A stretch of 43,341 bases of DNA from Leucoraja ocellata (Eukaryota): positions 124,001-167,341 of the forward strand of contig JAWMAR010002088.1 of NCBI GenBank assembly GCA_036785375.1. Reading direction: 5' to 3'. Positions within the stretch are counted from its first letter, which is position 1. Every line of letters starts with the position of its first letter. Shown here in pieces: positions 1,651-20,660 of the stretch. The translations under genes and the position numbers were made by a program. The notes beneath the pieces are model-generated. The model searched no databases and was not told the DNA's origin. It saw only the letters and a program-made list of their open reading frames with translations.

Positions 1651-1961
1651 ACTCAGTTGGCTTCCTCCATGTGCTCCAGTTTCATCCCATATACCAAAGA
1701 CGTGCCAGTGAATTAGTTGGACATTGCAAATTATCCGTAGTGGAGCTGAATGAAAGGAGAATCCGAGGGAGCAGAGTTCAAGGTGTGAGAGAGAGCTGTG
1801 GAGCAGTTTGTCGACATTTCATTGAAAATGAGCATCGACTCAATGGGCCGAATTACCTTTCATTCTGTCATGATTGGGTCAGAGATAATATTACTCATTG
1901 CCTCAGAGTGATATCTTACTCATTGCTTACCATCGCAAAACAACACTTTTTCAGAACTCAC

Positions 1962-2237
1962 CTTTTCTGGTCAGGTATGTCTTTCCAATTGCATAGTATG
2001 TACGCCAATAATCCACACAGTCATGTTCTAACAAGCTCTTGAAATAACGGTTCATTTTTTCATTCTTGTCCCATTTCTCTTTGAAGGGTTCAGCTATTGG
2101 ATCATGCACCGTCCACTTTAGTTTGTCCTTGTCGAAACTAAATGCATATCTTCCGTCAAAAGCCAACTTCAATATCCCTAAATTGGGACTGTGATCGTTC
2201 ACCTGACAACCAAACTGACCTTGAGTATAGTGATATT
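1962..2237 (-). CDS. MHC class I-like gene, exon 3 (alpha2 domain)
   Basis: Acceptor gtttttctttcag| and donor |GTGAGT, 276 nt, phase 1/1. Translation: YHYTQGQFGCQVNDHSPNLGILKLAFDGRYAFSFDKDKLKWTVHDPIAEPFKEKWDKNEKMNRYFKSLLEHDCVDYWRTYYAIGKTYLTRK, with the C101-C164 pair, FDG, W133 and KW146-147 equivalents. Confidence 0.95.
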
Positions 2238-2389
2238 CTGAAAGAAAAACAAAATCATTATTTGATTTATTGTTAAGACTGGGTAATTTCTGATCTCCAG
2301 GGTCCAAGTCATTTCTATATGTCACAAGTAGCAAGGGTCACAGCACAGGTCCCTGCAGAACTCTACTTGTCACTGAACTACAGCCTGAA

Positions 2390-3334: not shown

Positions 3335-4135
3335 TTAAAACCGAAGGTAGACACAAAATGCTGCAGGACAAGCAGCATCTCTGGAGAGAAGGAATGTGCG
3401 ACGTTTCTGGTCGAGACACTTTCTCAGATTGATGTCAAGGGAGAGACAAAGATAGAATATAGGCAGAGACAGTAAGACTGGTGGGAGAACTGGGAAGGGG
3501 AGGGGATGGAAAGAGAAAGCAAGGGCTATCGAATGATAGAGAAGTCAATGTTTATACTGCTGGAGGGTATACTAAATTGTTCATAACTATGGACTATAAA
3601 CTAAACCAAGTAAAATAAGAGGTGCTGTTCCTCCAATTTGCACTGGGCCTCACTCACACAATGGAGGAAGCCCAGGACAGAAAGTTCATATTGGGAATCG
3701 GAGGGGAAGTTGAAGTGCTGAGCCACCGGGAGATCAGGTAGGTTAAGACGGACTGAGCGGACGTGTTCAGTGAAATGATCGCCAAGCCTGCGCTTGGTCT
3801 CGCCGATGCAGAGAAGTTGACAACTGGAACAGTGGATACAGTAGATGAGGTTGGGGGAGGAGCAAGTGAACCTCTGCTTCACCTGGAAAGACTTTGGGGC
3901 CTTGGATGGAGTAGAGCGGGAAGGTGAAGGCGGAGGTAAAGGGACAGGCGTTGCATCTCCTGCAGTTGCAGGGGAAAGTACCCGGGATGGGGGTGGTTTG
4001 TGTGTGAAGGGATGAGTTGACCAGGGAGTTTTCCTTGGGAACGGTCTCTGCACAAAGCAGAAAGTGGTGAGATGGGAAGTGGCTAGTAATGGGATCCTGC
4101 TGGAGGTGGCGATAATGATGGAGGGTTATATGCTG
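3335..4135 (-). mobile_element. Penelope-like element 3' part (GIY-YIG endonuclease plus 3' UTR)
   Basis: ORF 3601-4053 reads FTCSSPNLIYCIHCSSCQLLCIGETKRRLGDHF...VAQHF. A degenerate hammerhead motif lies at ~3398-3430. Confidence 0.85.
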
Positions 4136-5805: not shown

Positions 5806-6996
5806 GTGGTTGCCTGCCTAAATGACTACCGCCCTGTTGCCCTGACCCCAATAATAATGAAGTGTTTTGAACGCCTGGTGAAACCCCACATTACTGCCAG
5901 CCTCCCCTCATCGTTAGACCCCCTACAGTTTGCCCATCGCCCCAACCGCTCTACAGAGGATGCCATCTCCACCACGCTGCACACAGTAATCGCGCATCTG
6001 GAACACAAGAACACATACGCCAGAATCCTGTACATTGACTTCAGCTCAGCGTTTAATACCATCATCCCACAGAGACTTGTGGAGAAACTAACCCTGCTGG
6101 GCCTCAACACCACCCTGTGTCACTGGATCTTGGACTTTCTGACAGAGAGACCGCAGTCAGTCCGTGTTGGCAAGAACACTTCAGGCTCGATCACGCTGAG
6201 CACCGGCTCCCCTCAAGGCTGTGTGCTCAGCCCGCTGTTGTTCACACTGCTCACACATGACTGTGCTGCCAGATTCAGGGACAATAAAATCATAAAGTTC
6301 GCGGACGACACTACAGTGGTGGGACTCATCAGTGGAGATGACGAAACAAGGTACAGGGAGGAAGTAGAACAACTGGTGGACTGGTGCGGCAAAAATAACC
6401 TAGAATTGAATGTCGAAAAAACTAAGGAGATGGTTGTCGACTTCAGGAGGGCGCAGCCTGAGCATACACCGCTCAACATTAGTGGCACTGCAGTGGAGAG
6501 AGTGGAGAGCATAAAGTTCCTCGGTGTGCAGATAACGGACAACCTCACCTGGTCCAGGAACACCACTGGGACCGTCAAACGGGCCCATCAGCGACTGCAC
6601 TTCCTGAGGAAACTAAAACAGGCCTCACTCCCCACCAACATCCTCAGGACTTTCTACAGGGGCACGGTGGAGTCTGTACTCACGTACTGCATCAATACGT
6701 GGTACTGCACCTGCAACTGCTCGGACAGGAAGGCTCTGCAGAGGGTAGTGAGGGGAGCAGAGAGGATTATTGGCGTCTCCCTACCCTCGGTACAAGAACT
6801 GTTCCAGAGCCGCTGTCTGAAGAAAGCACAGAGAATTGCCAAGGACAAACTGCACCCCCTCCACACACACCTGGATCTCTTGCCATCAGGCAAGAGATAT
6901 CGAAGCATCAAAGCCCGGACTACGAGGCTGCTAAACAGCTTCCTACCACAGGCGGTGAGGCTGCTAAACAGTCACTCTGCACTCACAGTCACTTGA
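5806..6996 (+). CDS. Reverse transcriptase ORF (uninterrupted, N-terminally truncated) of the Rex1 element
   Basis: 396-aa open frame containing the RT core motifs. It has no genuine start because the 5' end is the insertion junction. Confidence 0.85.
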
Positions 6997-10090: not shown

Positions 10091-11265
10091 GCCTCATGAG
10101 CCCACTCTAGCCCAGAGAACAAAATTATTCCATCACTAATTTTCCCCAAAACAGATCTTCCTCATTTCTATCAATGCCACAAATCCACCTTTACAAGAGA
10201 CATATGCAGTAGTCGATTAATCTACTAAATCAGCACATTTTTGGTATGTGGGAGAAAACTGGAGAACAAACATTGTCACAGGGAGAATGCTTATACCTCC
10301 TGCAGACTGCACTGGAGATTAGGATTGAACCCAGATCACTGGAGCTGTGAGCCAGCAGCACTCGTTGCTCTAAAGCAGTCATAGAGAGAGTTGCACAGCA
10401 TGGATACAAGCCCTTTGGCTCAACTTGTTCATGCTAATCTAGATACCCCAGGGCTGCCAACATTGGGTGAGAGTTTGGGAGTGAGAGATTGCGAGAGACC
10501 AAGCCCGAGGGAGCATAGCGACCGGGGGGATGGGGGGGGGGGGGGGAGGGGGTGGGAGGGGGGAAGTGGGGTGGGAGGGATGAGAGGGTGGGAGGGGGGA
10601 GTGGGGTGGGAGGGGTGAGGGGGTCCCCCTCCCATTGGTATGGAACATTTTTATTTTTCAGCTTGAAATTGTGCAATATGGTGCATACTGTAGCGAGTCT
10701 TTTAACTTACACTTGAATGCAATGTATATGCTTTAAATTGTATTGGAGCATTTTTGAAAGGGGGGAGGCTGTGCAATCACTGATCACTGGCCTTGGGGGT
10801 ACCCAGTGAGGGAGTGGAGCAACTGAGTGGGGAGAGGGTGTGGAAGAAAGGTGTCCCCCCTTCCAGGGTAGGAACTTTTTTAAATTTGATGTATTATAAT
10901 CATGTTTTAGCGCACTGTAGAAGTATGATTTCTATGTTTTTTGTATGAGGTATTTTTAAGAGGTAACTTTTTAAGGGGTAACTTTATCCACACAAAGGGT
11001 CCACACGTTCAATTGGCCTGCACTGCCTTGTGGCAGAGAATTCCGCAGATTCACAACTCTCTGCGTGAAGAAAGTTTGTTCTCATCTCAGTCCTATTCTT
11101 ATTCTTTAACTGTGACCCATGGTTCTGAATGCCCACAACATCGGGAACATATTTCCTGCAGTTACAGTAAGTGAAAATCTAGCAGGCAAGCAGGATGCTT
11201 TCACCAACCACCCCAATTTGAAGTCCACTATCTTCCACCGTATCTACCCAGTGTTTGGTACTTAC

Positions 11266-11420
11266 TTCCAGCAGCCACTGGTTGTCCTCCAGGATACACC
11301 GAGCCCCAGCCTGATCCATGCTGGTCACCTGGGTGAATTCGGCACAGAGACTCTCACGGCAGCGGCACAACGCTTCGCCGCCTCCGACGGCCCGGGACTC
11401 TTGCACTGAGGCTGCTCCAT
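11266..11420 (-). pseudogene. TDP2: Captured TDP2-like exon 1 (N-terminal UBA-like domain) inside the TIR element
   Basis: GCCATGG Kozak start at 11420 gives MEQPQCKSPGPSEAA. After a 1-nt shift it reads ALCRCRESLCAEFTQVTSMDQAGARCILEDNQWLLE, followed directly by GTAAGT. This matches the recalled vertebrate TDP2 pattern RRLLCVEFASVASCDAAVAQCFLAENDWEME. Confidence 0.75.
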
Positions 11421-11663
11421 GGCCGGAGCTGCAATGAGCAACTCGCCAGCCGGCAAACACTCGGCAGTCCCGCTCCCCGTCCGCATCTGTCCCCGCCGCT
11501 GCTTCTGCTTTCAACACCTGCGACCCATGCAGTTGATATGAGTTTTGACATTTTCTTTGATCACAGAATTTCTCACAACAGAGCGAGATAAATTTGTGAT
11601 CACCGTGAGAATTTGGTGAAATGCGGGATTCTCACGCTCAATGCATGGGAGTTGGCAGCCCTG

Positions 11664-12350
11664 CCTCTCTATCTCCCTCTCCCTCTTCCCCTTCTCTCTC
11701 CCCCTCTCTCTCGCCCCTCCCCCTCCCCTCTCTCCCCCGTCTCACCCCTCTCCCCTTCCCTCTCTATTCTCTCTCCCCCCTCTCTCTCTCCCTCTCTCTC
11801 TCTCCTCTCTTCCCCCTCTCTTGCCCTCCCCCTCCCTTCTCTTTCCCCCAACTCTCTCTCCCCTCTCTTTCCCCCAAGTCTCTCTTCCCCTCTCTCCCCC
11901 TCCTCCCACCTCACTCTCCCCCTCTCTCTCGTCCCCTCTCCCCCCTCTTTCCCCTAACTCTTCTCTCTCTCGCCTCTCTCTCTTTCTCCCTCCCTCTCTA
12001 TCTCTCCCTCTCTACACAATCTCCCCTCTCTCTCTGTCTCTCCTCTCACCTCTCTCTTCCCCCTCTCTCTCATCTCTCTCTCTCTCCCCCATTTCTCCCT
12101 CCCACCTCACTCTCCCCCTGGCTCTTTCTCCTCTTTCTCTTTGCCCCCATCTCTCTCTTTCCCCCTCTCTCTCATTCTCTCCTACCCTCTCCTCCCTCTC
12201 CCACCTCACCCCCCCCCCCTCTCTCCCCCCTCTCCCTCACCATTCATGCCCCCTCTGTCTCTCCACTCTCACTCTCCTCTCACTCCCCTTTCACCCCCCC
12301 CCCCCCACCCCGTCTCCCTGTCTCATTACCCCCTCTCTCTCTCCACCACC
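11664..12350. repeat. ~690-bp C/T-rich low-complexity (polypyrimidine) tract
   Basis: Almost exclusively C and T on the + strand. It lies between the two right-hand ends of the TIR element. Confidence 0.95.
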
Positions 12351-12800
12351 CTTTGGGAGCTTCCGGCGGCCCGCAACTTGCACTGTCCTGAGTGCTCCAT
12401 GGCCAGAGCTGCAGCGAGCGACTTGTCAGCACCGCAAGCACTCGACAGTCCCAGCTCCCCGCATCTGTTCCCGCCACTGGTTCTGCTCCCATCCCTCCCG
12501 CAGCCCCGGCTCTCCAACACCCGCGGACCCTGCAGTTTATCCGAGTTTTAAAATTTTCGTTGATCACAAAATTTCTCACCGCTGAGTGTGAGAAATGTCT
12601 GATCAGTGTGAGGGCGTGAGAGTTTGCTTGAGGGTGTGAGTCTCACGCTCAAAGCGTGAGAGTTGGCAGCCCTGGATACCCCATCTAAGCTAGTCCCATT
12701 TACCCTGCAATGGGTAGAAACTGTATCACTGAAACCTTTCCCATGCAGTGTCTTTTAAATATTGTTATTGTACCTGCCCAACTCCATTATCTGGAAGTTT

Positions 12801-13527
12801 AAGAGGGAACTGCAGATGCTGGAGAATCGAAGGTTACACAAAAAAGCTGGAGAAACTCAGCAGGTGCAGCAGCATCTATGGAGCGAAGTAGATAGGCAAC
12901 GTTTCGGGCCGAAACCCTTCTTCAGACTGATCGGGGGTGGGGGTGGGTGGGGACAAGAAAGGGAAAAGGAGGAGTAGCCAGAAGGCTGGGGGATGGGAGG
13001 AGACAGCAGGGGGGCTGAGGAAGGGGAGGAGACAGCAAGGACTAACAAAATTGGGAGAATTCGATGTTCATGCCCCCAGGGGTGCAGACTCCCCAAACGG
13101 AATATGAGGTGCTGTTCCTCCAATTTCCGGTGCTGCTCGCTGTGGCCATGGAGGAGACCCAGGACAGAGAGGTCGGAGGCGGAGTGGGAGGGGGAGTTGA
13201 AGTGCTGAGCCACCGGGAGGTCAGCTTGGTTATTGCGGACCGAGCGGAGGTGTTCGGCGAAACGATCGCCCAACCTCCGCTTGGTCTCACCGATATAGAT
13301 CTGCTGACATCTAGAGCAGCGGACGCAATAGATGAGGTTGGAAGAGATGCAGGTAAACCTCTGTCGCACCTGGAACGATTGCTTGGGTCCTTGAACGGAG
13401 TCGAGGGGGGAGGTAAAGGGACAAGTGTTGCATCTCTTGCGGTTGCAAGGGAAAGTGCCCGGGGAGGGGGTGGACCGAGAGGGAAGGGAAGAATTGACAA
13501 GGGAGTTATGGAGGGAGCGGTCTTTGC
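12801..13527 (-). mobile_element. Penelope-like element 3' part (GIY-YIG endonuclease plus 3' UTR with hammerhead motif)
   Basis: Encodes FTCISSNLIYCVRCSRCQQIYIGETKRRLGDRFAEH...VAQHFN...GMNIEF, the CCHH-flanked GIY-YIG domain of PLEs. Confidence 0.9.
12891..12932 (-). ncRNA. Minimal type I hammerhead ribozyme motif
   Basis: GAUCAGU-CUGAAGA-A-GGGU(UUCG)GCCC-GAAA-CG-UU^GCCUAUC. It has the full core, a 4-bp stem II with a UUCG loop, palindromic ACGU in place of stem III, and stem I with a 2x2 internal loop. Confidence 0.75.
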
Positions 13528-16650: not shown

Positions 16651-19600
16651 TATAATAACCATTTAACAATTACAGCACGGAAACAGGCCATCTCGACCCT
16701 TCTAGTCCGTGCCGAAAACAAATTCTCCCCTAGTCCCATACACCTACATTCAGACCATAACCCTCCATACCTTTCCCATCCATATAACTATCCAATTTAT
16801 TTTTAAATGATAAAAACGAAACTGCCTCCACCACCTTCACTGGAAGCTCATTCCACACCGCCACCACTCTCTGAGTAAAGAAGTTCCCCCTCATGTTACC
16901 CCTAAATTTCTGTCCCTTAATTCTCAAGTCATGTCCCCTTCTTTGAATCTTCCCTACTCTCAGTGGGAAAAGCTTATCCACGTCAACTCTGTCTATACCT
17001 CTCATCATTTTAAAGACCTCTATCAAGTTCCCCCTTAACCTTCTGCGCTCCAAAGAATAAAGCCCTAACTTGTTCAACCTTTGCCTTGTACAATTTTAAC
17101 ATTACATCCCAACTTCTATACTCAATGCTCTGATTTATAAAGGCCAGCACACCAAAAGCTTTCTTTACCACCCTATCTACATGAGATTCCACTTTCAGGG
17201 AACTGTGCACAGTTATTCCCAGATCCCTCTGTTCACCTGCATTCTTCAATTCCCTACCATTTACCATGTACGTCCTATTTTGATTTGTCCTGCCAAGATG
17301 TAGCACCTCACACTTATCAGCATTAAACTCCACCTGCCATCTTTCAGCCCACTCTTCCAACTGGCATAAATCTCTCTGTAGACTTTGAAAATCTACTTCA
17401 TTATCCACAACCCCACCTATCTTAGTATCATCTGCATACTTACTAATCCAATTTACCACACCATCATCCAGATCATTGATGTACATGACAAACAACAGTG
17501 GACCCAACACAGATCCCTGTGACACCCCACCAGTCACTGGCCTCCAACCTGACAAACAACCATCCACCATTACTCTCTGGCATCTCCCATTCAGCCACTG
17601 TTGAATCCATCTTGCTACTCCTCCATTAATCCCCAACCATTGAACCTTCTTAACCAACCTCCCGTGAGGAACCTTGTCAAAGGCCTTACTGAAGTCCATA
17701 TATACAACATCCACTGCTTTACCCTCATCAATTTCCTGAGTAACCTTTTAAAAAAAATTCAAGAAGATTAGCCAAACATGATCTTCCAGGCACAAATCCA
17801 TGTTGACTGTTCCTAATCAGACCCTGTTTATCCAGATGCTTATATATATTATCTCTAAGTATCCTTTCCATTAATTTGACCACCACTGACGTCAAACTAA
17901 CAGGTCTATAATTGCTAGGTTTACTCTTAGACCCCTTTTTAAACAATGGAACAACATGCGCAGTACGCCAATCCTCTGGCACTATTCCCGTTTCTAATGA
18001 CATTTGAAATATTTCTGTCATAGCCCCTGCTATTTCTATACTAACTTCCCACAATGTCCTAGGGAACATCCTGTCCGGACCTGGAGACTTATTCACTTTT
18101 ATATTTCTCAAAAGTGTCAGTACTTCCTCTTCTTTGATCCTCATAGTTTCCATAGCTACTCTACTTGTTTCCCTTACCTCACATAATTCAATATCCTTCT
18201 CCTTGGTGAATACCGAAGAAAAGAAACTGTTCAATATCTCCCCCATCTCTTTTGACTCTGCAGATAGTTGTCCACTCTGACTCTCTGATGGACCAATTTT
18301 ATCCCTCGTTTTGTCCTTTTTATCCCTCGTTTTATCCTTTTGCTATTAATATAGCGGTAGAAACCCTTCGGATTTACTTTTACCTTACTTGCCAAAGCAA
18401 CCTCATATCTTCTTTTAGATTTTCTAATATCTTTCTTAAGATTCTTTTTACATTCTTTATACTCCTCAAGCACCTCATTTACTCCATGCTGCCTATAATT
18501 ATTGTAGAGCTCCCTCTTTTTCCGAACCAAGTGTCCAATTTCCCTTGAAAACCATGGCTCTTTACAATTTTTACGATTTCCTTTCAACCGAACAGGGACA
18601 TAAAGATTCTGTACTCTTAAAATTTCACCTTTAAATGTATTCCATTTCTCTTCCACATCTTTCCCATAAAACAAACTGTCCCAATTTACTCCTTTTAAAT
18701 CCTTTCGCATCTCCTCAAAGTTAGCCTTTCTCCAATCAAAAATCTCAACCCTAGGTCCAGTTTTGTCCCTCTCCATAATTATATTGAAACTAATGGTATT
18801 GTGATCACTGGACCCGAACTGTTCCCCAACGCATACCTCTGCCACCTGACCCATCTCATTTTCTAACAGGAGGTCCAGTACCGCCCCTTCTCTAGTAGGT
18901 ACTTCTATGTATTGCTGCAAAAAACTATCCTGCACACATTTTACAAACTCCAACCCATCCAGCCCATTTACAGAATGTGTTTCCCAGTCTATGTGTGGAA
19001 AATTGAAATCTCCCACAATCACTACCTTGTGCTTACTACTAATATCTGCAATCTCCTTACATATTTGCTCTTCCAATTCTCACTCCCCATTTGGCGGTCT
19101 ATAATACACCCCTATAAGTGTTGCTACCCCTTTCCCATTTCTCAGTTCCACCCAAATAGCCTCCCTAGACGAACCCTCCAATCTATCCTGCCAAAGCACT
19201 GCTGTAATATCTTCCCTGATAAGCAATGCAACACCTCCACCTCTTGCCCCCCCAATTCTATCACACCTGAAGCAACAAAATCCTGGAATATTTAGTTTCC
19301 AATCGCAGCCCTCCTGCAACCATGTTTCACTGATCGCCACAACATCATACTTCCAGGTGTCAATCCAGGCTCTAAGTTCATTCACCTTTCTTACAATGCT
19401 CCTAGCATTAAAATATACACATTTAAGAAACGCACCATCTCTTATTCTCTGTTTATTTTCTTTTTCTGATCTCTCCCCTACATTTTGGGTCAGAGTGCTA
19501 CCATTCTCTGCCTCCTGCCTTACACACTGACTGCTAGCTTTCCCAATTTGAGTCCCTCCCCCCAACCATACTAGTTTAAAGTCTCCACAGTAGCCTTTGC

Positions 19601-20660
19601 AAATCTCCCCACCAGGATATTGGTCCCTCTCGAGTTCAAGTGCAACCTGTCTTTTCTGTACAGGTCGCACCTTCCCCAAAAGAGGTCCCAATGATCCAGA
19701 AACTTAAATCCATACCCACTGCACCAGTCCCTCATCCACGCATTTATTCTCCACCTCGCTCCATTCCTACTCTCACTGTCGCGTGGCACAGGCAGTAATC
19801 CTGAGATTGTTACCTTTGCAGTCCTTCTCCTTAACTCTCTACCTAACTTCCTAAATTCTTCTTTCAGGACCTCTTCTCTTTTTTTACCTATGTTGTTGGT
19901 ACCTATATGTACCACAACCTCAGGCTCCTCTCCCTCCCATTTCAGGATTTCTTGGACACGTTCAGACACATCCCTGACCCTGGCACCAGGGAGGCAAACT
20001 ACCATCCGGGTCTTCTGTCTACGCCCACAGAATCGCCTATCCGACCCCCTAACTATAGAGTCCCCTATTACAATTGCCCTCCTCTTCTTTTCCTTACCCT
20101 TCTGAGCAACAGGACCGGTCTTTGTGCCAGAGGCCTGGCCGCTGTCGCTGCCCCCAGGTAGGCTGTCTCCCCCACCCTTACTCAAACATGAGTACTTATT
20201 TTCAAGGTGTCCAGCCACCGGGGTACTCACCAGTTCCTGCCTCTGCCCATTGCCCTTCCTAACTGTGACCCAGTTTTCTGTCTCCCGTGGTCTTGGAGTG
20301 ACCACCTCCCTGTAACTCCTATCTATGACCTCCTCGCTCTCCCTGAGCAGACAGAGGTCATCGAGTTGCTGTTCCAGGTTCCTGACACGGTCCCTTAGGA
20401 GCCCCATCTCGACGCACCTTGCGCAGATGTGGACGTCTGGAGGGCACTCCGACTCCATGACCTCCCACATCTGACATCCAGAACAGTAAACTGCCCCGGC
20501 CCTCATTCTCCCCCTTATCCAAATACAATAAAGCCTTACCCGGGATACAAGCCAATCAGCTGCTTCCTCTGGTCCGTTCGACCAATCAGAGGCTTCCACC
20601 AGAATCCTTCTCTGGAAGTGAGATGGAACGTTGCAGATTTGGGTAACTCACAGCTCCAGG
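16651..20660 (-). mobile_element. Near full-length CR1-clade LINE (family B, (GTTATATG)n-type tail), ORF2 disrupted
   Basis: ORF1 at 19571-20506. APE endonuclease motifs (YFNARS, AISETW, GVYYRPP, VGDFNFP, SDHN) and RT motifs (MDFSKAFD, QGSVLGP, YADD). There is a nonsense codon at 19080, frameshifts near 17725 and 18240-18300, and an internal deletion near 17080. Confidence 0.93.
19571..20506 (-). CDS. CR1 ORF1p: zinc-finger (CxxC...CxxC), coiled coil and SGNH/GDSL esterase domain
   Basis: CSGC...CARC, then LLRDRVRNLEQQLDDL, then esterase blocks IVIGDSIVRG, CLPGA, VVHIGTNN and DRLHLN. The frame is intact. Confidence 0.88.
   Translation of the reverse strand: MRAGAVYCSGCQMWEVMESECPPDVHICARCVEMGLLRDRVRNLEQQLDDLCLLRESEEVIDRSYREVVTPRPRETENWVTVRKGNGQRQELVSTPVAGHLENKYSCLSKGGGDSLPGGSDSGQASGTKTGPVAQKGKEKKRRAIVIGDSIVRGSDRRFCGRRQKTRMVVCLPGARVRDVSERVQEILKWEGEEPEVVVHIGTNNIGKKREEVLKEEFRKLGRELRRRTAKVTISGLLPVPRDSESRNGARWRINAWMRDWCSGYGFKFLDHWDLFWGRCDLYRKDRLHLNSRGTNILVGRFAKATVETLN

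What the first reader, a model, noticed from the sequence alone, without database searches (positions are those of the whole stretch)
11160..11663. A TIR DNA transposon appears to carry a captured first exon of the DNA-repair gene TDP2 (Pack-type gene capture in a vertebrate)
Seen: inside the element bounded by CAGGGCTGCCAAC TIRs and a GATACCC TSD, the minus strand has a GC-rich leader and a GCCATGG start at 11420. It encodes MEQPQCKSPGPSEAA, then after a 1-nt shift ALCRCRESLCAEFTQVTSMDQAGARCILEDNQWLLE, immediately followed by a perfect GTAAGT donor (11265-11260). Knowledge (recalled, not searched): the vertebrate TDP2 N-terminal UBA-like domain reads RRLLCVEFASVASCDAAVAQCFLAENDWEME. By eye 15 positions are identical without gaps (R,L,C,E,F,V,S,D,A,A,C,L,N,W,E). 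Inference: the retained donor and intron-like sequence imply capture at the DNA level rather than retrocopying, as in plant Pack-MULEs. I do not know of such a TDP2-carrying family in cartilaginous fish. An alternative is that the autonomous parent carries a fuller TDP2-like accessory gene. That would be notable because TDP2 resolves 5'-phosphotyrosyl protein-DNA adducts, but it is speculative.
Basis: partly seen in the sequence, partly recalled or inferred. Interest (0 to 1): 0.88.

Follow-up and report, generated by a model that had tools for sequence, protein, structure and literature searches.

The report
Transposon family carrying TDP2-like first exon
A decayed copy of a many-copy cut-and-paste transposon carries the promoter-like leader, first exon and splice donor of a gene resembling the DNA-repair gene TDP2; transposons that spread gene fragments are already known in animals, but rarely at many copies.

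Summary
On the minus strand a Kozak ATG (11420) opens an exon that ends at 11266 before GTAAGT. A 1-nt loss near 11377-11380 breaks its frame.

- **TDP2 likeness:** the 36-codon second part passes Pfam UBA_4. Its only solved-structure match is the human TDP2 UBA domain (15 of 32 identical, E 9e-5). Likeness stops at the donor.
- **The element:** it spans 10449-12674 (2,226 bp), with exact 13-nt TIRs, a perfect 7-bp TSD (GATACCC) and GTGAGA subterminal repeats. The TIR beside the exon (11651-11663) is a third, internal copy. The outer right end repeats TIR, leader and ATG at about 70-76% identity.
- **Copies elsewhere:** four independent unspliced genomic copies (P0001, P0002, P0004, P0005) have the frame intact. 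One is also preceded by the element's subterminal sequence. DNA runs of two organisms each show about 90 contig variants over the exon, so this is a multi-copy family.
- **Expression:** polyA RNA showed no exon-specific signal and no use of the donor in the rows shown.
- **Unresolved:** I could not reach the host TDP2 locus or an autonomous copy, so capture (Pack-TIR) versus the parent element's own first exon stays open.

Pack-TIRs in vertebrates are already published. The scan flagged a similar element elsewhere in this genome (s1-885073).

The parts
10442..10448 (.). Left target-site duplication, GATACCC
   Evidence: Read directly. It is identical to the 7 bases after the right end.
10449..10461 (+). 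Left terminal inverted repeat, CAGGGCTGCCAAC
   Evidence: Exact match.
10462..10519 (+). Left subterminal region with two tandem GTGAGAG-type 14-nt units
   Evidence: D1: 10467-10480 and 10481-10494; motif count.
10520..10625 (.). G-rich simple tract, missing in some other copies
   Evidence: Sequence. Contigs skipping 10475-10653 occur in X1 (4 contigs) and X3 (5 contigs) (table 5).
10626..11010 (-). AT-rich, CpG-poor internal segment of the family, with no coding signal
   Evidence: Summed word depth is 1.5e5-4e5 in X1, like the exon part (table 2). CpG o/e is 0.19. The ORFs scanned there gave no Pfam hit.
11011..11160 (-). Internal fragment of a LINE ORF2 C-terminal region, embedded in the element (filler or nested piece)
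   Evidence: blastn finds three other LINE copies in the window at 73.5-75.8% identity. Loose ends at 11029 show that the LINE continues in other copies (table 7).
11161..11265 (-). Intron-like sequence after the donor GTAAGT (11265-11260)
   Evidence: The same read-through peptide (VSTKHW...GESILLAC) appears in P0001, P0002 and P0005. CpG o/e is 0.20.
11266..11420 (-). First exon: ATG at 11420, N-terminal peptide, then about two thirds of a TDP2-type UBA domain. The frame is broken by a 1-nt loss near 11377-11380
   Evidence: Translations. Pfam UBA_4: E 2.1e-5, profile positions 2-30 of 43. PDB 6q00_B TDP2: E 8.7e-5. P0001 has the frame intact.
11421..11540 (-). GC-rich, CpG-rich leader (promoter or 5'UTR-like)
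   Evidence: GC 63%, CpG o/e 0.88. It aligns with the outer copy's leader.
11541..11663 (-). Inner right end: subterminal GTGAGA/TCTCAC repeats and a third exact TIR copy (11651-11663), with no TSD
11664..12345 (.). GA/CT-rich simple-sequence tract between the two right-end copies
   Evidence: It gives self-hits only, as a low-complexity repeat.
12346..12400 (-). Outer copy: ATG (12400) and about 45 nt of a diverged exon start (MEHSGQCKLRAAGSS...), then cut off by the simple tract
12401..12661 (-). Outer leader and subterminal region
   Evidence: 70.2% identical to the inner copy over 322 columns by blastn; MAFFT alignment of 11250-11663 against 12330-12674 has 76% mean column identity. CpG o/e of the outer leader is 0.75.
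12662..12674 (-). Right terminal inverted repeat, the one paired with the TSD
12675..12681 (.). Right target-site duplication, GATACCC
   Evidence: Reverse complement of the flank read.

Best explanation
Window 10449-12674 is one dead copy of a multi-copy, non-autonomous cut-and-paste (TIR) transposon family found in several related organisms.

Next to its right end the family carries a DNA-level copy of the 5' end of a TDP2-type gene. This is a CpG-rich leader, a Kozak ATG, and a roughly 52-codon first exon. The exon encodes an N-terminal peptide plus the first two thirds of the TDP2 UBA domain. A canonical GTAAGT donor and about 100 nt of intron follow.

The cassette does nothing for transposition. 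It is carried along when a transposase supplied in trans acts on the TIRs and the GTGAGA subterminal repeats, making 7-bp TSDs. The most likely origin is capture of host TDP2 5' sequence by an element end (Pack-TIR type: gap repair or template switching), followed by amplification.

In this copy the exon is frameshifted. A second, diverged and truncated right end sits outside the first, and the composite was the unit that transposed.

Shown: the element, the exon, its TDP2 likeness, the DNA-level multi-copy nature, and the decay. Inferred: capture from the host gene, and mobilisation in trans.
For: - Element: exact TIRs and TSD. GTGAGA/TCTCAC occurs 10 times in the 341 nt of the three ends against 0.25 expected (the motif was chosen after seeing it).
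- Exon: Pfam UBA_4 at 24.6 bits against a cutoff of 21.8, and 4 of 5 copies hit UBA_4.
- TDP2 likeness: TDP2 UBA is the only PDB hit at E<=10 for the window peptide. It is the top hit for P0001, at 26.9 bits against 15.0 for p47. It is also the top hit for the 5-copy profile, at 28.3 bits (E 1.7e-5), with a second TDP2-family chain (4f1i_A) at E 1.5.
- Exon boundary: likeness to TDP2 and to the UBA_4 profile (positions 2-31 of 43) stops exactly at the GT donor, as expected of an exon cut out of a multi-exon gene.
- DNA-level copies: P0001, P0002 and P0005 read from the leader through the exon into the same intron-like sequence. P0005 starts in the subterminal region. The window's two right ends align from the TIR to 45 nt past the ATG.
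- Copy number: 94 (X1), 93 (X3) and 17 (X16) contigs cover site 11296. Element-wide summed depth is 40-100 times that of 10200-10290.
- Composition: CpG o/e is 0.66-0.88 in leader and exon against 0.19-0.20 in the rest of the element, like a housekeeping-gene CpG island grafted into a CpG-poor element.
- Patchwork interior: a LINE ORF2 fragment is also embedded, which fits repair-mediated filling.
- No transposase or other domain: 0 of 7 element ORFs hit Pfam.
- Precedent: Pack-TIRs exist in vertebrates (PMC8277862).
Against: - No parental TDP2 locus and no cartilaginous-fish TDP2 sequence was seen, so 'captured from TDP2' rests on 15-16 of 32 identities to human TDP2.
- The PDB E-value (about 1e-5 to 1e-4) is per query. 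It is not corrected for the many frames a reader can pick in 43 kb.
- The search of 1.84 billion representatives found no TDP2 and no other long protein sharing this exon at E<=0.001. It found only another genomic copy and one unrelated bacterial protein. No near-identical host exon is therefore on record.
- The cassette starts right after the subterminal repeats and reads inward, which is also where an autonomous element's own gene would start.
- No related element with these ends but without the cassette was seen.
- The exon and the intron read-through diverge at similar rates between copies (P0001 against P0002: about 77-80% and about 71% identity at the peptide level, counted by eye). This shows neutral decay and says nothing about origin.
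- The coincidence of the donor with the TDP2 exon 1 boundary was not checked.
Confidence: 0.5

Rival explanations
1. Deletion derivative of an autonomous transposon. The leader, exon 1 and start of intron 1 are the 5' end of the parent element's own gene, either a transposase or accessory protein with a TDP2-like UBA domain at its N-terminus or a fuller TDP2-like accessory gene. The non-autonomous family kept them as ordinary internally deleted elements do.
For: - The ATG lies 244 nt from the terminus and reads inward, directly after the subterminal repeats.
- The junction between end and leader is shared by two subfamilies that differ by 24-30%, so it is old and family-wide.
- The exon encodes an incomplete domain that needs a next exon.
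- An unchecked note from this scan reports a TIR family with 7-bp TSDs and a roughly 1000-aa transposase elsewhere in this genome (s1-885066).
Against: - No protein with this N-terminus joined to anything else was found among 1.84 billion representatives. None was found among 5.8 billion clusters in the 62-196 aa range either.
- No transposase superfamily with a UBA_4 N-terminus is known to me (recalled, not searched).
- The CpG-island-like make-up is confined to leader and exon.
- The much closer match to TDP2 than to other UBA domains means that, even here, the exon probably came from TDP2 at some point.
Confidence: 0.28
2. The exon is real and element-borne, but it derives from another UBA_4-type gene (p47/UBXN/FAF/DCUN1D-like, or a lineage-specific gene) and not from TDP2. 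The top TDP2 hit would then reflect only which UBA domains have solved structures.
For: - The Pfam hit is to the generic UBA_4 family.
- The Atlas feature search gives generic UBA-like clusters at 0.87-0.89, below the tool's 0.9 line.
- The match to TDP2 is only 32 residues long.
Against: - PDB holds several UBA_4-type domains. Only p47 appears, 12 bits lower.
- A second TDP2-family chain enters the profile search's top five.
- The identities include both cysteines of the LC.EF and C.L motifs.
Confidence: 0.12
3. There is no exon at all. It is a chance open frame in a GC-rich transposon leader that happens to resemble a three-helix motif.
For: - The domain match is short and the E-values are not corrected for the choice of frame.
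- This copy is frameshifted.
- RNA depth over the exon (12.9 and 17.6) is no higher than over the intron-like part (18.1 and 14.9). No joint at the donor appears among the rows shown.
Against: - A Kozak ATG, an intact ATG-to-donor frame in 3 of 3 other copies that reach the donor, and in a fourth up to its contig end, and homology ending exactly at a consensus GTAAGT together make chance unlikely. The protein collection does favour copies with long open frames, though.
- The Pfam score is above the curated cutoff.
Confidence: 0.05

Closest known systems
Pack-TIR elements of animals (Tan et al. 2021, Nat Commun, PMC8277862), for example Pack-hAT-N8_XT, which carries 291 bp of the CAPSL 5'UTR in Xenopus tropicalis
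   Same: A non-autonomous TIR element with a TSD, holding a short piece of the 5' end of a host-type gene at the DNA level, and present at more than one site.
   Different: - The parental copy is not identified here.
- The cassette includes a coding first exon and its donor.
- Copy number is far higher: about 90 contig variants per run, against 3 copies for the frog case and only 4 multicopy cases among 370 (passages read).
I could not confirm the organism, because run labels are coded. The paper's main text does not contain the word 'shark'. I did not see its supplementary list.
Plant Pack-MULEs and Pack-CACTA
   Same: Gene fragments with retained intron sequence lie between TIRs and are amplified by transposition. 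Capture of GC-rich 5' ends is typical (recalled).
   Different: Different superfamily: a 7-bp TSD and 13-nt TIRs here, against 9-11 bp TSDs and long TIRs for MULEs (recalled). Here there is a single fragment adjacent to one end.
TDP2 (tyrosyl-DNA phosphodiesterase 2) N-terminal UBA domain, PDB 6Q00/6Q01
   Same: 15-16 of 32 residues are identical, ungapped. It is the best and almost the only solved relative.
   Different: Only the first roughly 30 of 43 UBA_4 positions are present. There is no catalytic EEP domain in the element, and this copy is frameshifted.
Internally deleted non-autonomous elements (Ds-type, or MITEs derived from an autonomous parent)
   Same: Both ends are kept, with part of a first exon and intron next to one end, no transposase, and many copies.
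   Different: No autonomous parent has been seen. The retained exon resembles a host repair gene and not a transposase.

Membership tests
Non-autonomous TIR DNA transposon (MITE-like family) | Terminal inverted repeats flanked by a target-site duplication | tested here: met
   Exact 13-nt TIRs at 10449-10461 and 12662-12674, with GATACCC on both outer sides.
Non-autonomous TIR DNA transposon (MITE-like family) | No transposase gene inside | tested here: met
   The only ORFs of 90 aa or more in 10449-12674 are the exon ORF and simple-sequence frames. 0 of 7 minus-strand ORFs hit Pfam at E<=1.
Non-autonomous TIR DNA transposon (MITE-like family) | Many copies at different sites | tested here: inconclusive
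   Many copies are shown: 94, 93 and 17 contigs over site 11296 in X1, X3 and X16, and 4 other copies as proteins.
Pack-TIR / Pack-type gene capture | The internal sequence comes from a host gene whose parental copy can be identified | not testable with these tools
   Only protein-level likeness to human TDP2 UBA is available. There was no access to the source genome or to a cartilaginous-fish TDP2. No TDP2 hit appeared.
Pack-TIR / Pack-type gene capture | The same TE family exists without the captured piece | not tested
   No other copy of these ends is in the window. Public DNA collections gave nothing.
Pack-TIR / Pack-type gene capture | Capture at the DNA level, with intron and donor kept | tested here: met
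   GTAAGT and the same intron-like read-through are present in the window copy and in P0001, P0002 and P0005.
TDP2 gene or orthologue | N-terminal UBA-like domain of TDP2 type | tested here: met
   6q00_B scores 25.6-28.3 bits, E 1.7e-5 to 8.7e-5. The domain is partial: UBA_4 positions 2-31 of 43.
TDP2 gene or orthologue | C-terminal Mg-dependent EEP phosphodiesterase domain | tested here: not met
   There are no further exons or domain hits in the element. The only Exo_endo_phos hit among the 7 large window ORFs scanned is a LINE endonuclease at 18234-19076. This is a gene fragment, not a TDP2 gene.
TDP2 gene or orthologue | The donor coincides with the TDP2 exon 1/intron 1 boundary | not testable with these tools
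   No annotated vertebrate gene record is on hand. The papers found give no boundary, and PMC5836098 is not held.
hAT superfamily | 8-bp target-site duplication | tested here: not met
   7 of 7 bases match directly at the ends. The 8-mers next to the ends (AGATACCC and GATACCCC) agree at 3 of 8 positions (read). An 8-bp reading works only if the left end lacks its first C. The superfamily is left unassigned. The CAG-start TIR resemblance to hAT is recalled, not tested.
Pfam UBA_4 (PF14555) | Score above the gathering cutoff | tested here: met
   24.6 bits (window) and 26.5 bits (P0001) against a cutoff of 21.8. 4 of 5 copies match.

The most novel reading that the evidence does not exclude
The family descends from an autonomous transposon of this genome (perhaps the 7-bp-TSD family with a roughly 1000-aa transposase noted elsewhere in the scan). 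That element's own gene would begin with a TDP2-derived UBA domain, or it would carry a fuller TDP2-like accessory gene. A DNA transposon would then have recruited part of a host DNA-protein-crosslink repair factor, for example to bind ubiquitin at its excision or integration sites. Its deletion derivatives would have spread a CpG-rich promoter, first exon and splice-donor cassette through the genome.
Probability: 0.12. Interest if true: 0.8.

Novelty: new member of a known kind. Interest (0 to 1): 0.45.

Why it matters
If the capture reading holds, this is a Pack-TIR amplified to many copies in several related species. The published animal survey found only 4 multicopy cases among 370, the one described having three copies.

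Each copy carries a CpG-rich leader, a start codon and a consensus splice donor. These are the parts needed to donate a new promoter and first exon to a host gene, so the family could be a source of chimeric transcripts and exon shuffling.

In practice, such copies can seed false 'UBA-like' or 'TDP2-like' first exons in gene models of these genomes.

If instead the exon belongs to the parent transposon's own gene, a transposon protein with a TDP2-type ubiquitin-binding head would be new.

Tried and rejected
- **Finding the parental gene or a full-length protein.** One search of 1.84 billion representatives with P0001 gave only another genomic copy (P0002) and an unrelated bacterial repeat protein (P0003). 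Two word-indexed searches gave 1 hit among 8 candidates and 3 hits among 2,490. All hits are unspliced genomic copies. That tool's length window (62-196 aa) cannot reach a TDP2 of about 360 aa. These blanks say little about longer kin.
- **Looking for copies in public DNA.** JGI metagenomes, GTDB genomes and IMG/VR gave nothing. This is expected, since these hold little animal DNA.
- **Paralogous empty site in the window, to confirm the TSD.** None was found. Flank hits are short and do not cross the junction.
- **Splicing evidence.** PolyA RNA reads of organism D (X23, about 6 in 100 of the run read) give a depth of 7-18 per strand on exon and intron-like sequence alike. There is no joint or loose end at 11266 among the 15 joints and 24 loose ends shown. 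A further 585 joints and 3,757 loose ends were not shown, so absence is not proven. That organism may not be the window's.
- **TDP2 exon 1 boundary from papers.** Not found, and PMC5836098 is not held.
- **Prior description.** Searches for 'TDP2' + 'transposon' + 'gene capture' gave 0 papers. 'TDP2' + 'transposase' + 'transposable element' gave 2 unrelated papers. The TIR as a word gave 1 unrelated paper. I did not see the supplementary list of 370 Pack-TIRs in PMC8277862 (supplements are closed and I did not ask). It could already list a TDP2 case or a cartilaginous-fish case.
- **Rejected: the real TDP2 locus.** The exon is frameshifted, multi-copy, and lies inside TIRs with a TSD. The nearby host exon is MHC class I-like.
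- **Rejected: a recent tandem duplication for the two right ends.** They are only 70-76% alike.
- **Rejected: filing under hAT.** The TSD is 7 bp.
- **Not done.** I did not fold the peptide, because a fold could not separate TDP2 from other UBA domains.
Full report
**What is in the sequence**

Read on the minus strand, 11663 down to 11160 holds the following, in order:
- an exact 13-nt terminal motif, CAGGGCTGCCAAC (11663-11651);
- about 110 nt rich in GTGAGA/TCTCAC repeats;
- a 120-nt GC-rich leader;
- gccATGg at 11420;
- an open frame that ends at 11266, directly before GTAAGT (11265-11260);
- about 100 nt of CpG-poor sequence.

The ATG frame gives MEQPQCKSPGPSEAA and then runs into a stop. 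The next frame gives ALCRCRESLCAEFTQVTSMDQAGARCILEDNQWLLE up to the donor. Three-frame translation and comparison with an intact copy place a 1-nt loss near 11377-11380.

**The element**

The 13-mer occurs exactly three times in the window: 10449 (+), 11651-11663 (-) and 12662-12674 (-). The outer pair is flanked on both sides by GATACCC, so the mobilised unit is 10449-12674, 2,226 bp, with a perfect 7-bp TSD. An 8-bp reading fails unless the left end lacks its first base.

GTGAGA or its complement occurs 10 times in the 341 nt of the three ends, against 0.25 expected from the rest of the window (the motif was chosen post hoc). This looks like transposase-binding subterminal repeats.

The TIR next to the exon is an internal third copy. 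Outside it lie 680 nt of GA/CT simple sequence. Then comes a second right end (12674 down to about 12346) that aligns with the inner one from the TIR through the leader to about 45 nt past its own gccATGg. Identity is only 70% by blastn and 76% by MAFFT. The two are old, diverged versions, not a fresh duplication.

The rest of the interior has three parts. There is a G-rich tract that some other copies lack (table 5). There is a CpG-poor AT-rich segment. There is also a 150-nt internal fragment of a LINE ORF2 (11011-11160), which has three LINE relatives elsewhere in the window. No transposase or other domain is present: 0 of 7 ORFs hit Pfam at E<=1.

**Is the exon TDP2-like?**

- The 36-residue part passes Pfam UBA_4 (24.6 bits against a cutoff of 21.8, E 2.1e-5, profile positions 2-30 of 43).
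- Against all PDB sequences, its only hit at E<=10 is the human TDP2 UBA domain (6q00_B, 25.6 bits, E 8.7e-5, 15 of 32 identical, ungapped).
- An intact paralogue (P0001) gives 26.9 bits for TDP2 against 15.0 bits (E 0.27) for p47, the next UBA domain.
- A profile of five copies gives 28.3 bits (E 1.7e-5). It also brings in a second TDP2-family chain, 4f1i_A, at E 1.5. I recall this as the nematode enzyme; the call does not say.
- 4 of 5 copies hit UBA_4.
- The Atlas feature search gives UBA_4 clusters at 0.87-0.89, below that tool's 0.9 line, so it is a lead only.

Similarity to TDP2 and to the Pfam profile stops exactly at the GT. The read-through residues share nothing with the TDP2 helix that follows. 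The domain is therefore cut at an exon boundary, and the piece comes from a multi-exon gene.

One caveat applies. The case rests on the combination of a Kozak ATG, homology ending at a consensus donor, and frame conservation in other copies.

**It is a repeated, DNA-level family**

Protein searches returned only unspliced genomic copies:
- P0001 (112 aa, Logan), found;
- P0002 (110 aa, ENA), found;
- P0004 (70 aa, ENA), found;
- P0005 (141 aa, Logan), found.

In all four the ATG is in frame with the UBA part. The three that reach the donor read on into the same intron-like peptide as the window. P0005's ORF begins with a translation of the element's subterminal region, the same as the ORF over the window's outer end. 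The exon is therefore tied to this element end in independent copies.

Contigs of four runs were laid on 10200-12900 at 80% likeness. Sites in the exon are covered by 94 (X1), 93 (X3) and 17 (X16) contigs, the counter being capped at 128. Summed word depth over 10655-11655 is 0.8e5-4e5 in X1 and 2.8e5-1e6 in X3 (the LINE fragment's two bins, 11019-11200, are higher), against 3.4e3-4.0e3 at 10200-10290. At many sites nearly all contigs carry a letter other than the window's, for example at 11296, 11334 and 11434, which marks private decay of this copy.

Twenty runs from organisms labelled A-G hold 6-40% of the stretch's sampled words. Labels are coded, so I cannot name the taxa or confirm 'cartilaginous fish'.

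**Expression**

The one polyA RNA run with raw reads is X23, from organism D, with about 6 in 100 of the run read. It gives a depth of 7-18 on each strand, over the intron-like part as much as over the exon. No joint or loose end at 11266 appears among the rows shown. Most rows were not shown, and the organism may differ from the window's. This is weak evidence against use of the exon.

**Origin: capture or own gene?**

I could not settle this.

For capture (Pack-TIR):
- The much closer match to TDP2 than to other UBA domains.
- A CpG-island-like make-up confined to leader and exon (GC 63%, CpG o/e 0.66-0.88), against 0.19-0.20 in the rest of the element.
- A patchwork interior that also holds a LINE fragment.
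- No protein on record that joins this exon to a transposase.

For the parent element's own first exon:
- The cassette sits where an autonomous element's gene starts.
- The end-leader junction is shared by diverged subfamilies.
- An unchecked note of this scan reports a TIR family with 7-bp TSDs and a roughly 1000-aa transposase in this genome (s1-885066). That family could be either the mobilising partner or the parent.

No host TDP2 sequence, no autonomous copy and no cassette-free relative could be reached. The calls that tried were 17, 45, 48, 63 and 64. I put capture at about 0.5, own gene at about 0.28, another UBA_4 gene at about 0.12, and chance at about 0.05.

**Comparison with what is known**

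Pack-type capture by TIR elements in animals is published. Tan et al. 2021 (PMC8277862; passages read through 'find') report 370 Pack-TIRs in 100 animal genomes, 81 of them vertebrate, mostly hAT and Tc/Mariner. Only 4 were multicopy, for example a 291-bp CAPSL 5'UTR piece in three copies in a frog. The kind is therefore known.

What would be new here is the degree of amplification, the coding first exon with its donor, the source gene and the host group. I found no paper linking TDP2 to a transposon. I did not see that paper's supplementary tables, which could already list such a case. The scan itself flagged a similar twin-exon element elsewhere in this genome (s1-885073; not checked by me).

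**Verdict**

I file it as a new member of a known kind, of moderate interest.

Noticed in passing
window 1954-2334 (-): An open frame with a clear MHC class I alpha-domain match (Pfam MHC_I, E 4.5e-13, profile positions 91-178 of 179). The window appears to lie in or near an MHC class I-like gene.
   Followed up: partly
window 12860-13369 (-) and 3604-4053 (-): Two related ORFs of Penelope-like-element type, sharing ...GETKRRLGD.F.EH.RSV...LPVAQHF.... The first has a weak GIY-YIG hit (E 9.4e-4, below cutoff). The second has no Pfam hit. The first lies about 185 nt beyond the transposon's right TSD.
   Followed up: partly
window 17010-20599 (-): A LINE with a GDSL-esterase/OSK-like ORF1 (19574-20599; Lipase_GDSL_2, E 2.9e-14), followed by an AP-endonuclease ORF (18234-19076). 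The RT-like ORFs at 17010-18246 were read by eye and not scanned. Related RT fragments recur through the window.
   Followed up: no
window 5806-6993 (+): A reverse-transcriptase ORF (RVT_1, E 1.4e-34) whose tail also hits Pfam ALKBH8_N (E 8.2e-15). This is an odd family name for a LINE RT tail, and probably reflects how the Pfam model was built.
   Followed up: no
window 10524-10579: In the polyA RNA run X23, thousands of reads lie only partly on the G-run, with poly-G loose ends (2,606 at 10524 and 1,594 at 10531). This is most likely a sequencing poly-G artefact and not expression.
   Followed up: no
window 11664-12345: A 680-nt GA/CT simple-sequence tract joins the two right-end copies and truncates the outer exon start about 45 nt after its ATG. 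How it arose (expansion, or filler at a repair junction) is unexplained.
   Followed up: no
window 11421-11540 and 12401-12530: The leaders of both decayed copies keep a high CpG o/e (0.88 and 0.75), while the rest of the element is at 0.19-0.20. This suggests either a very CpG-rich origin or protection from methylation.
   Followed up: partly
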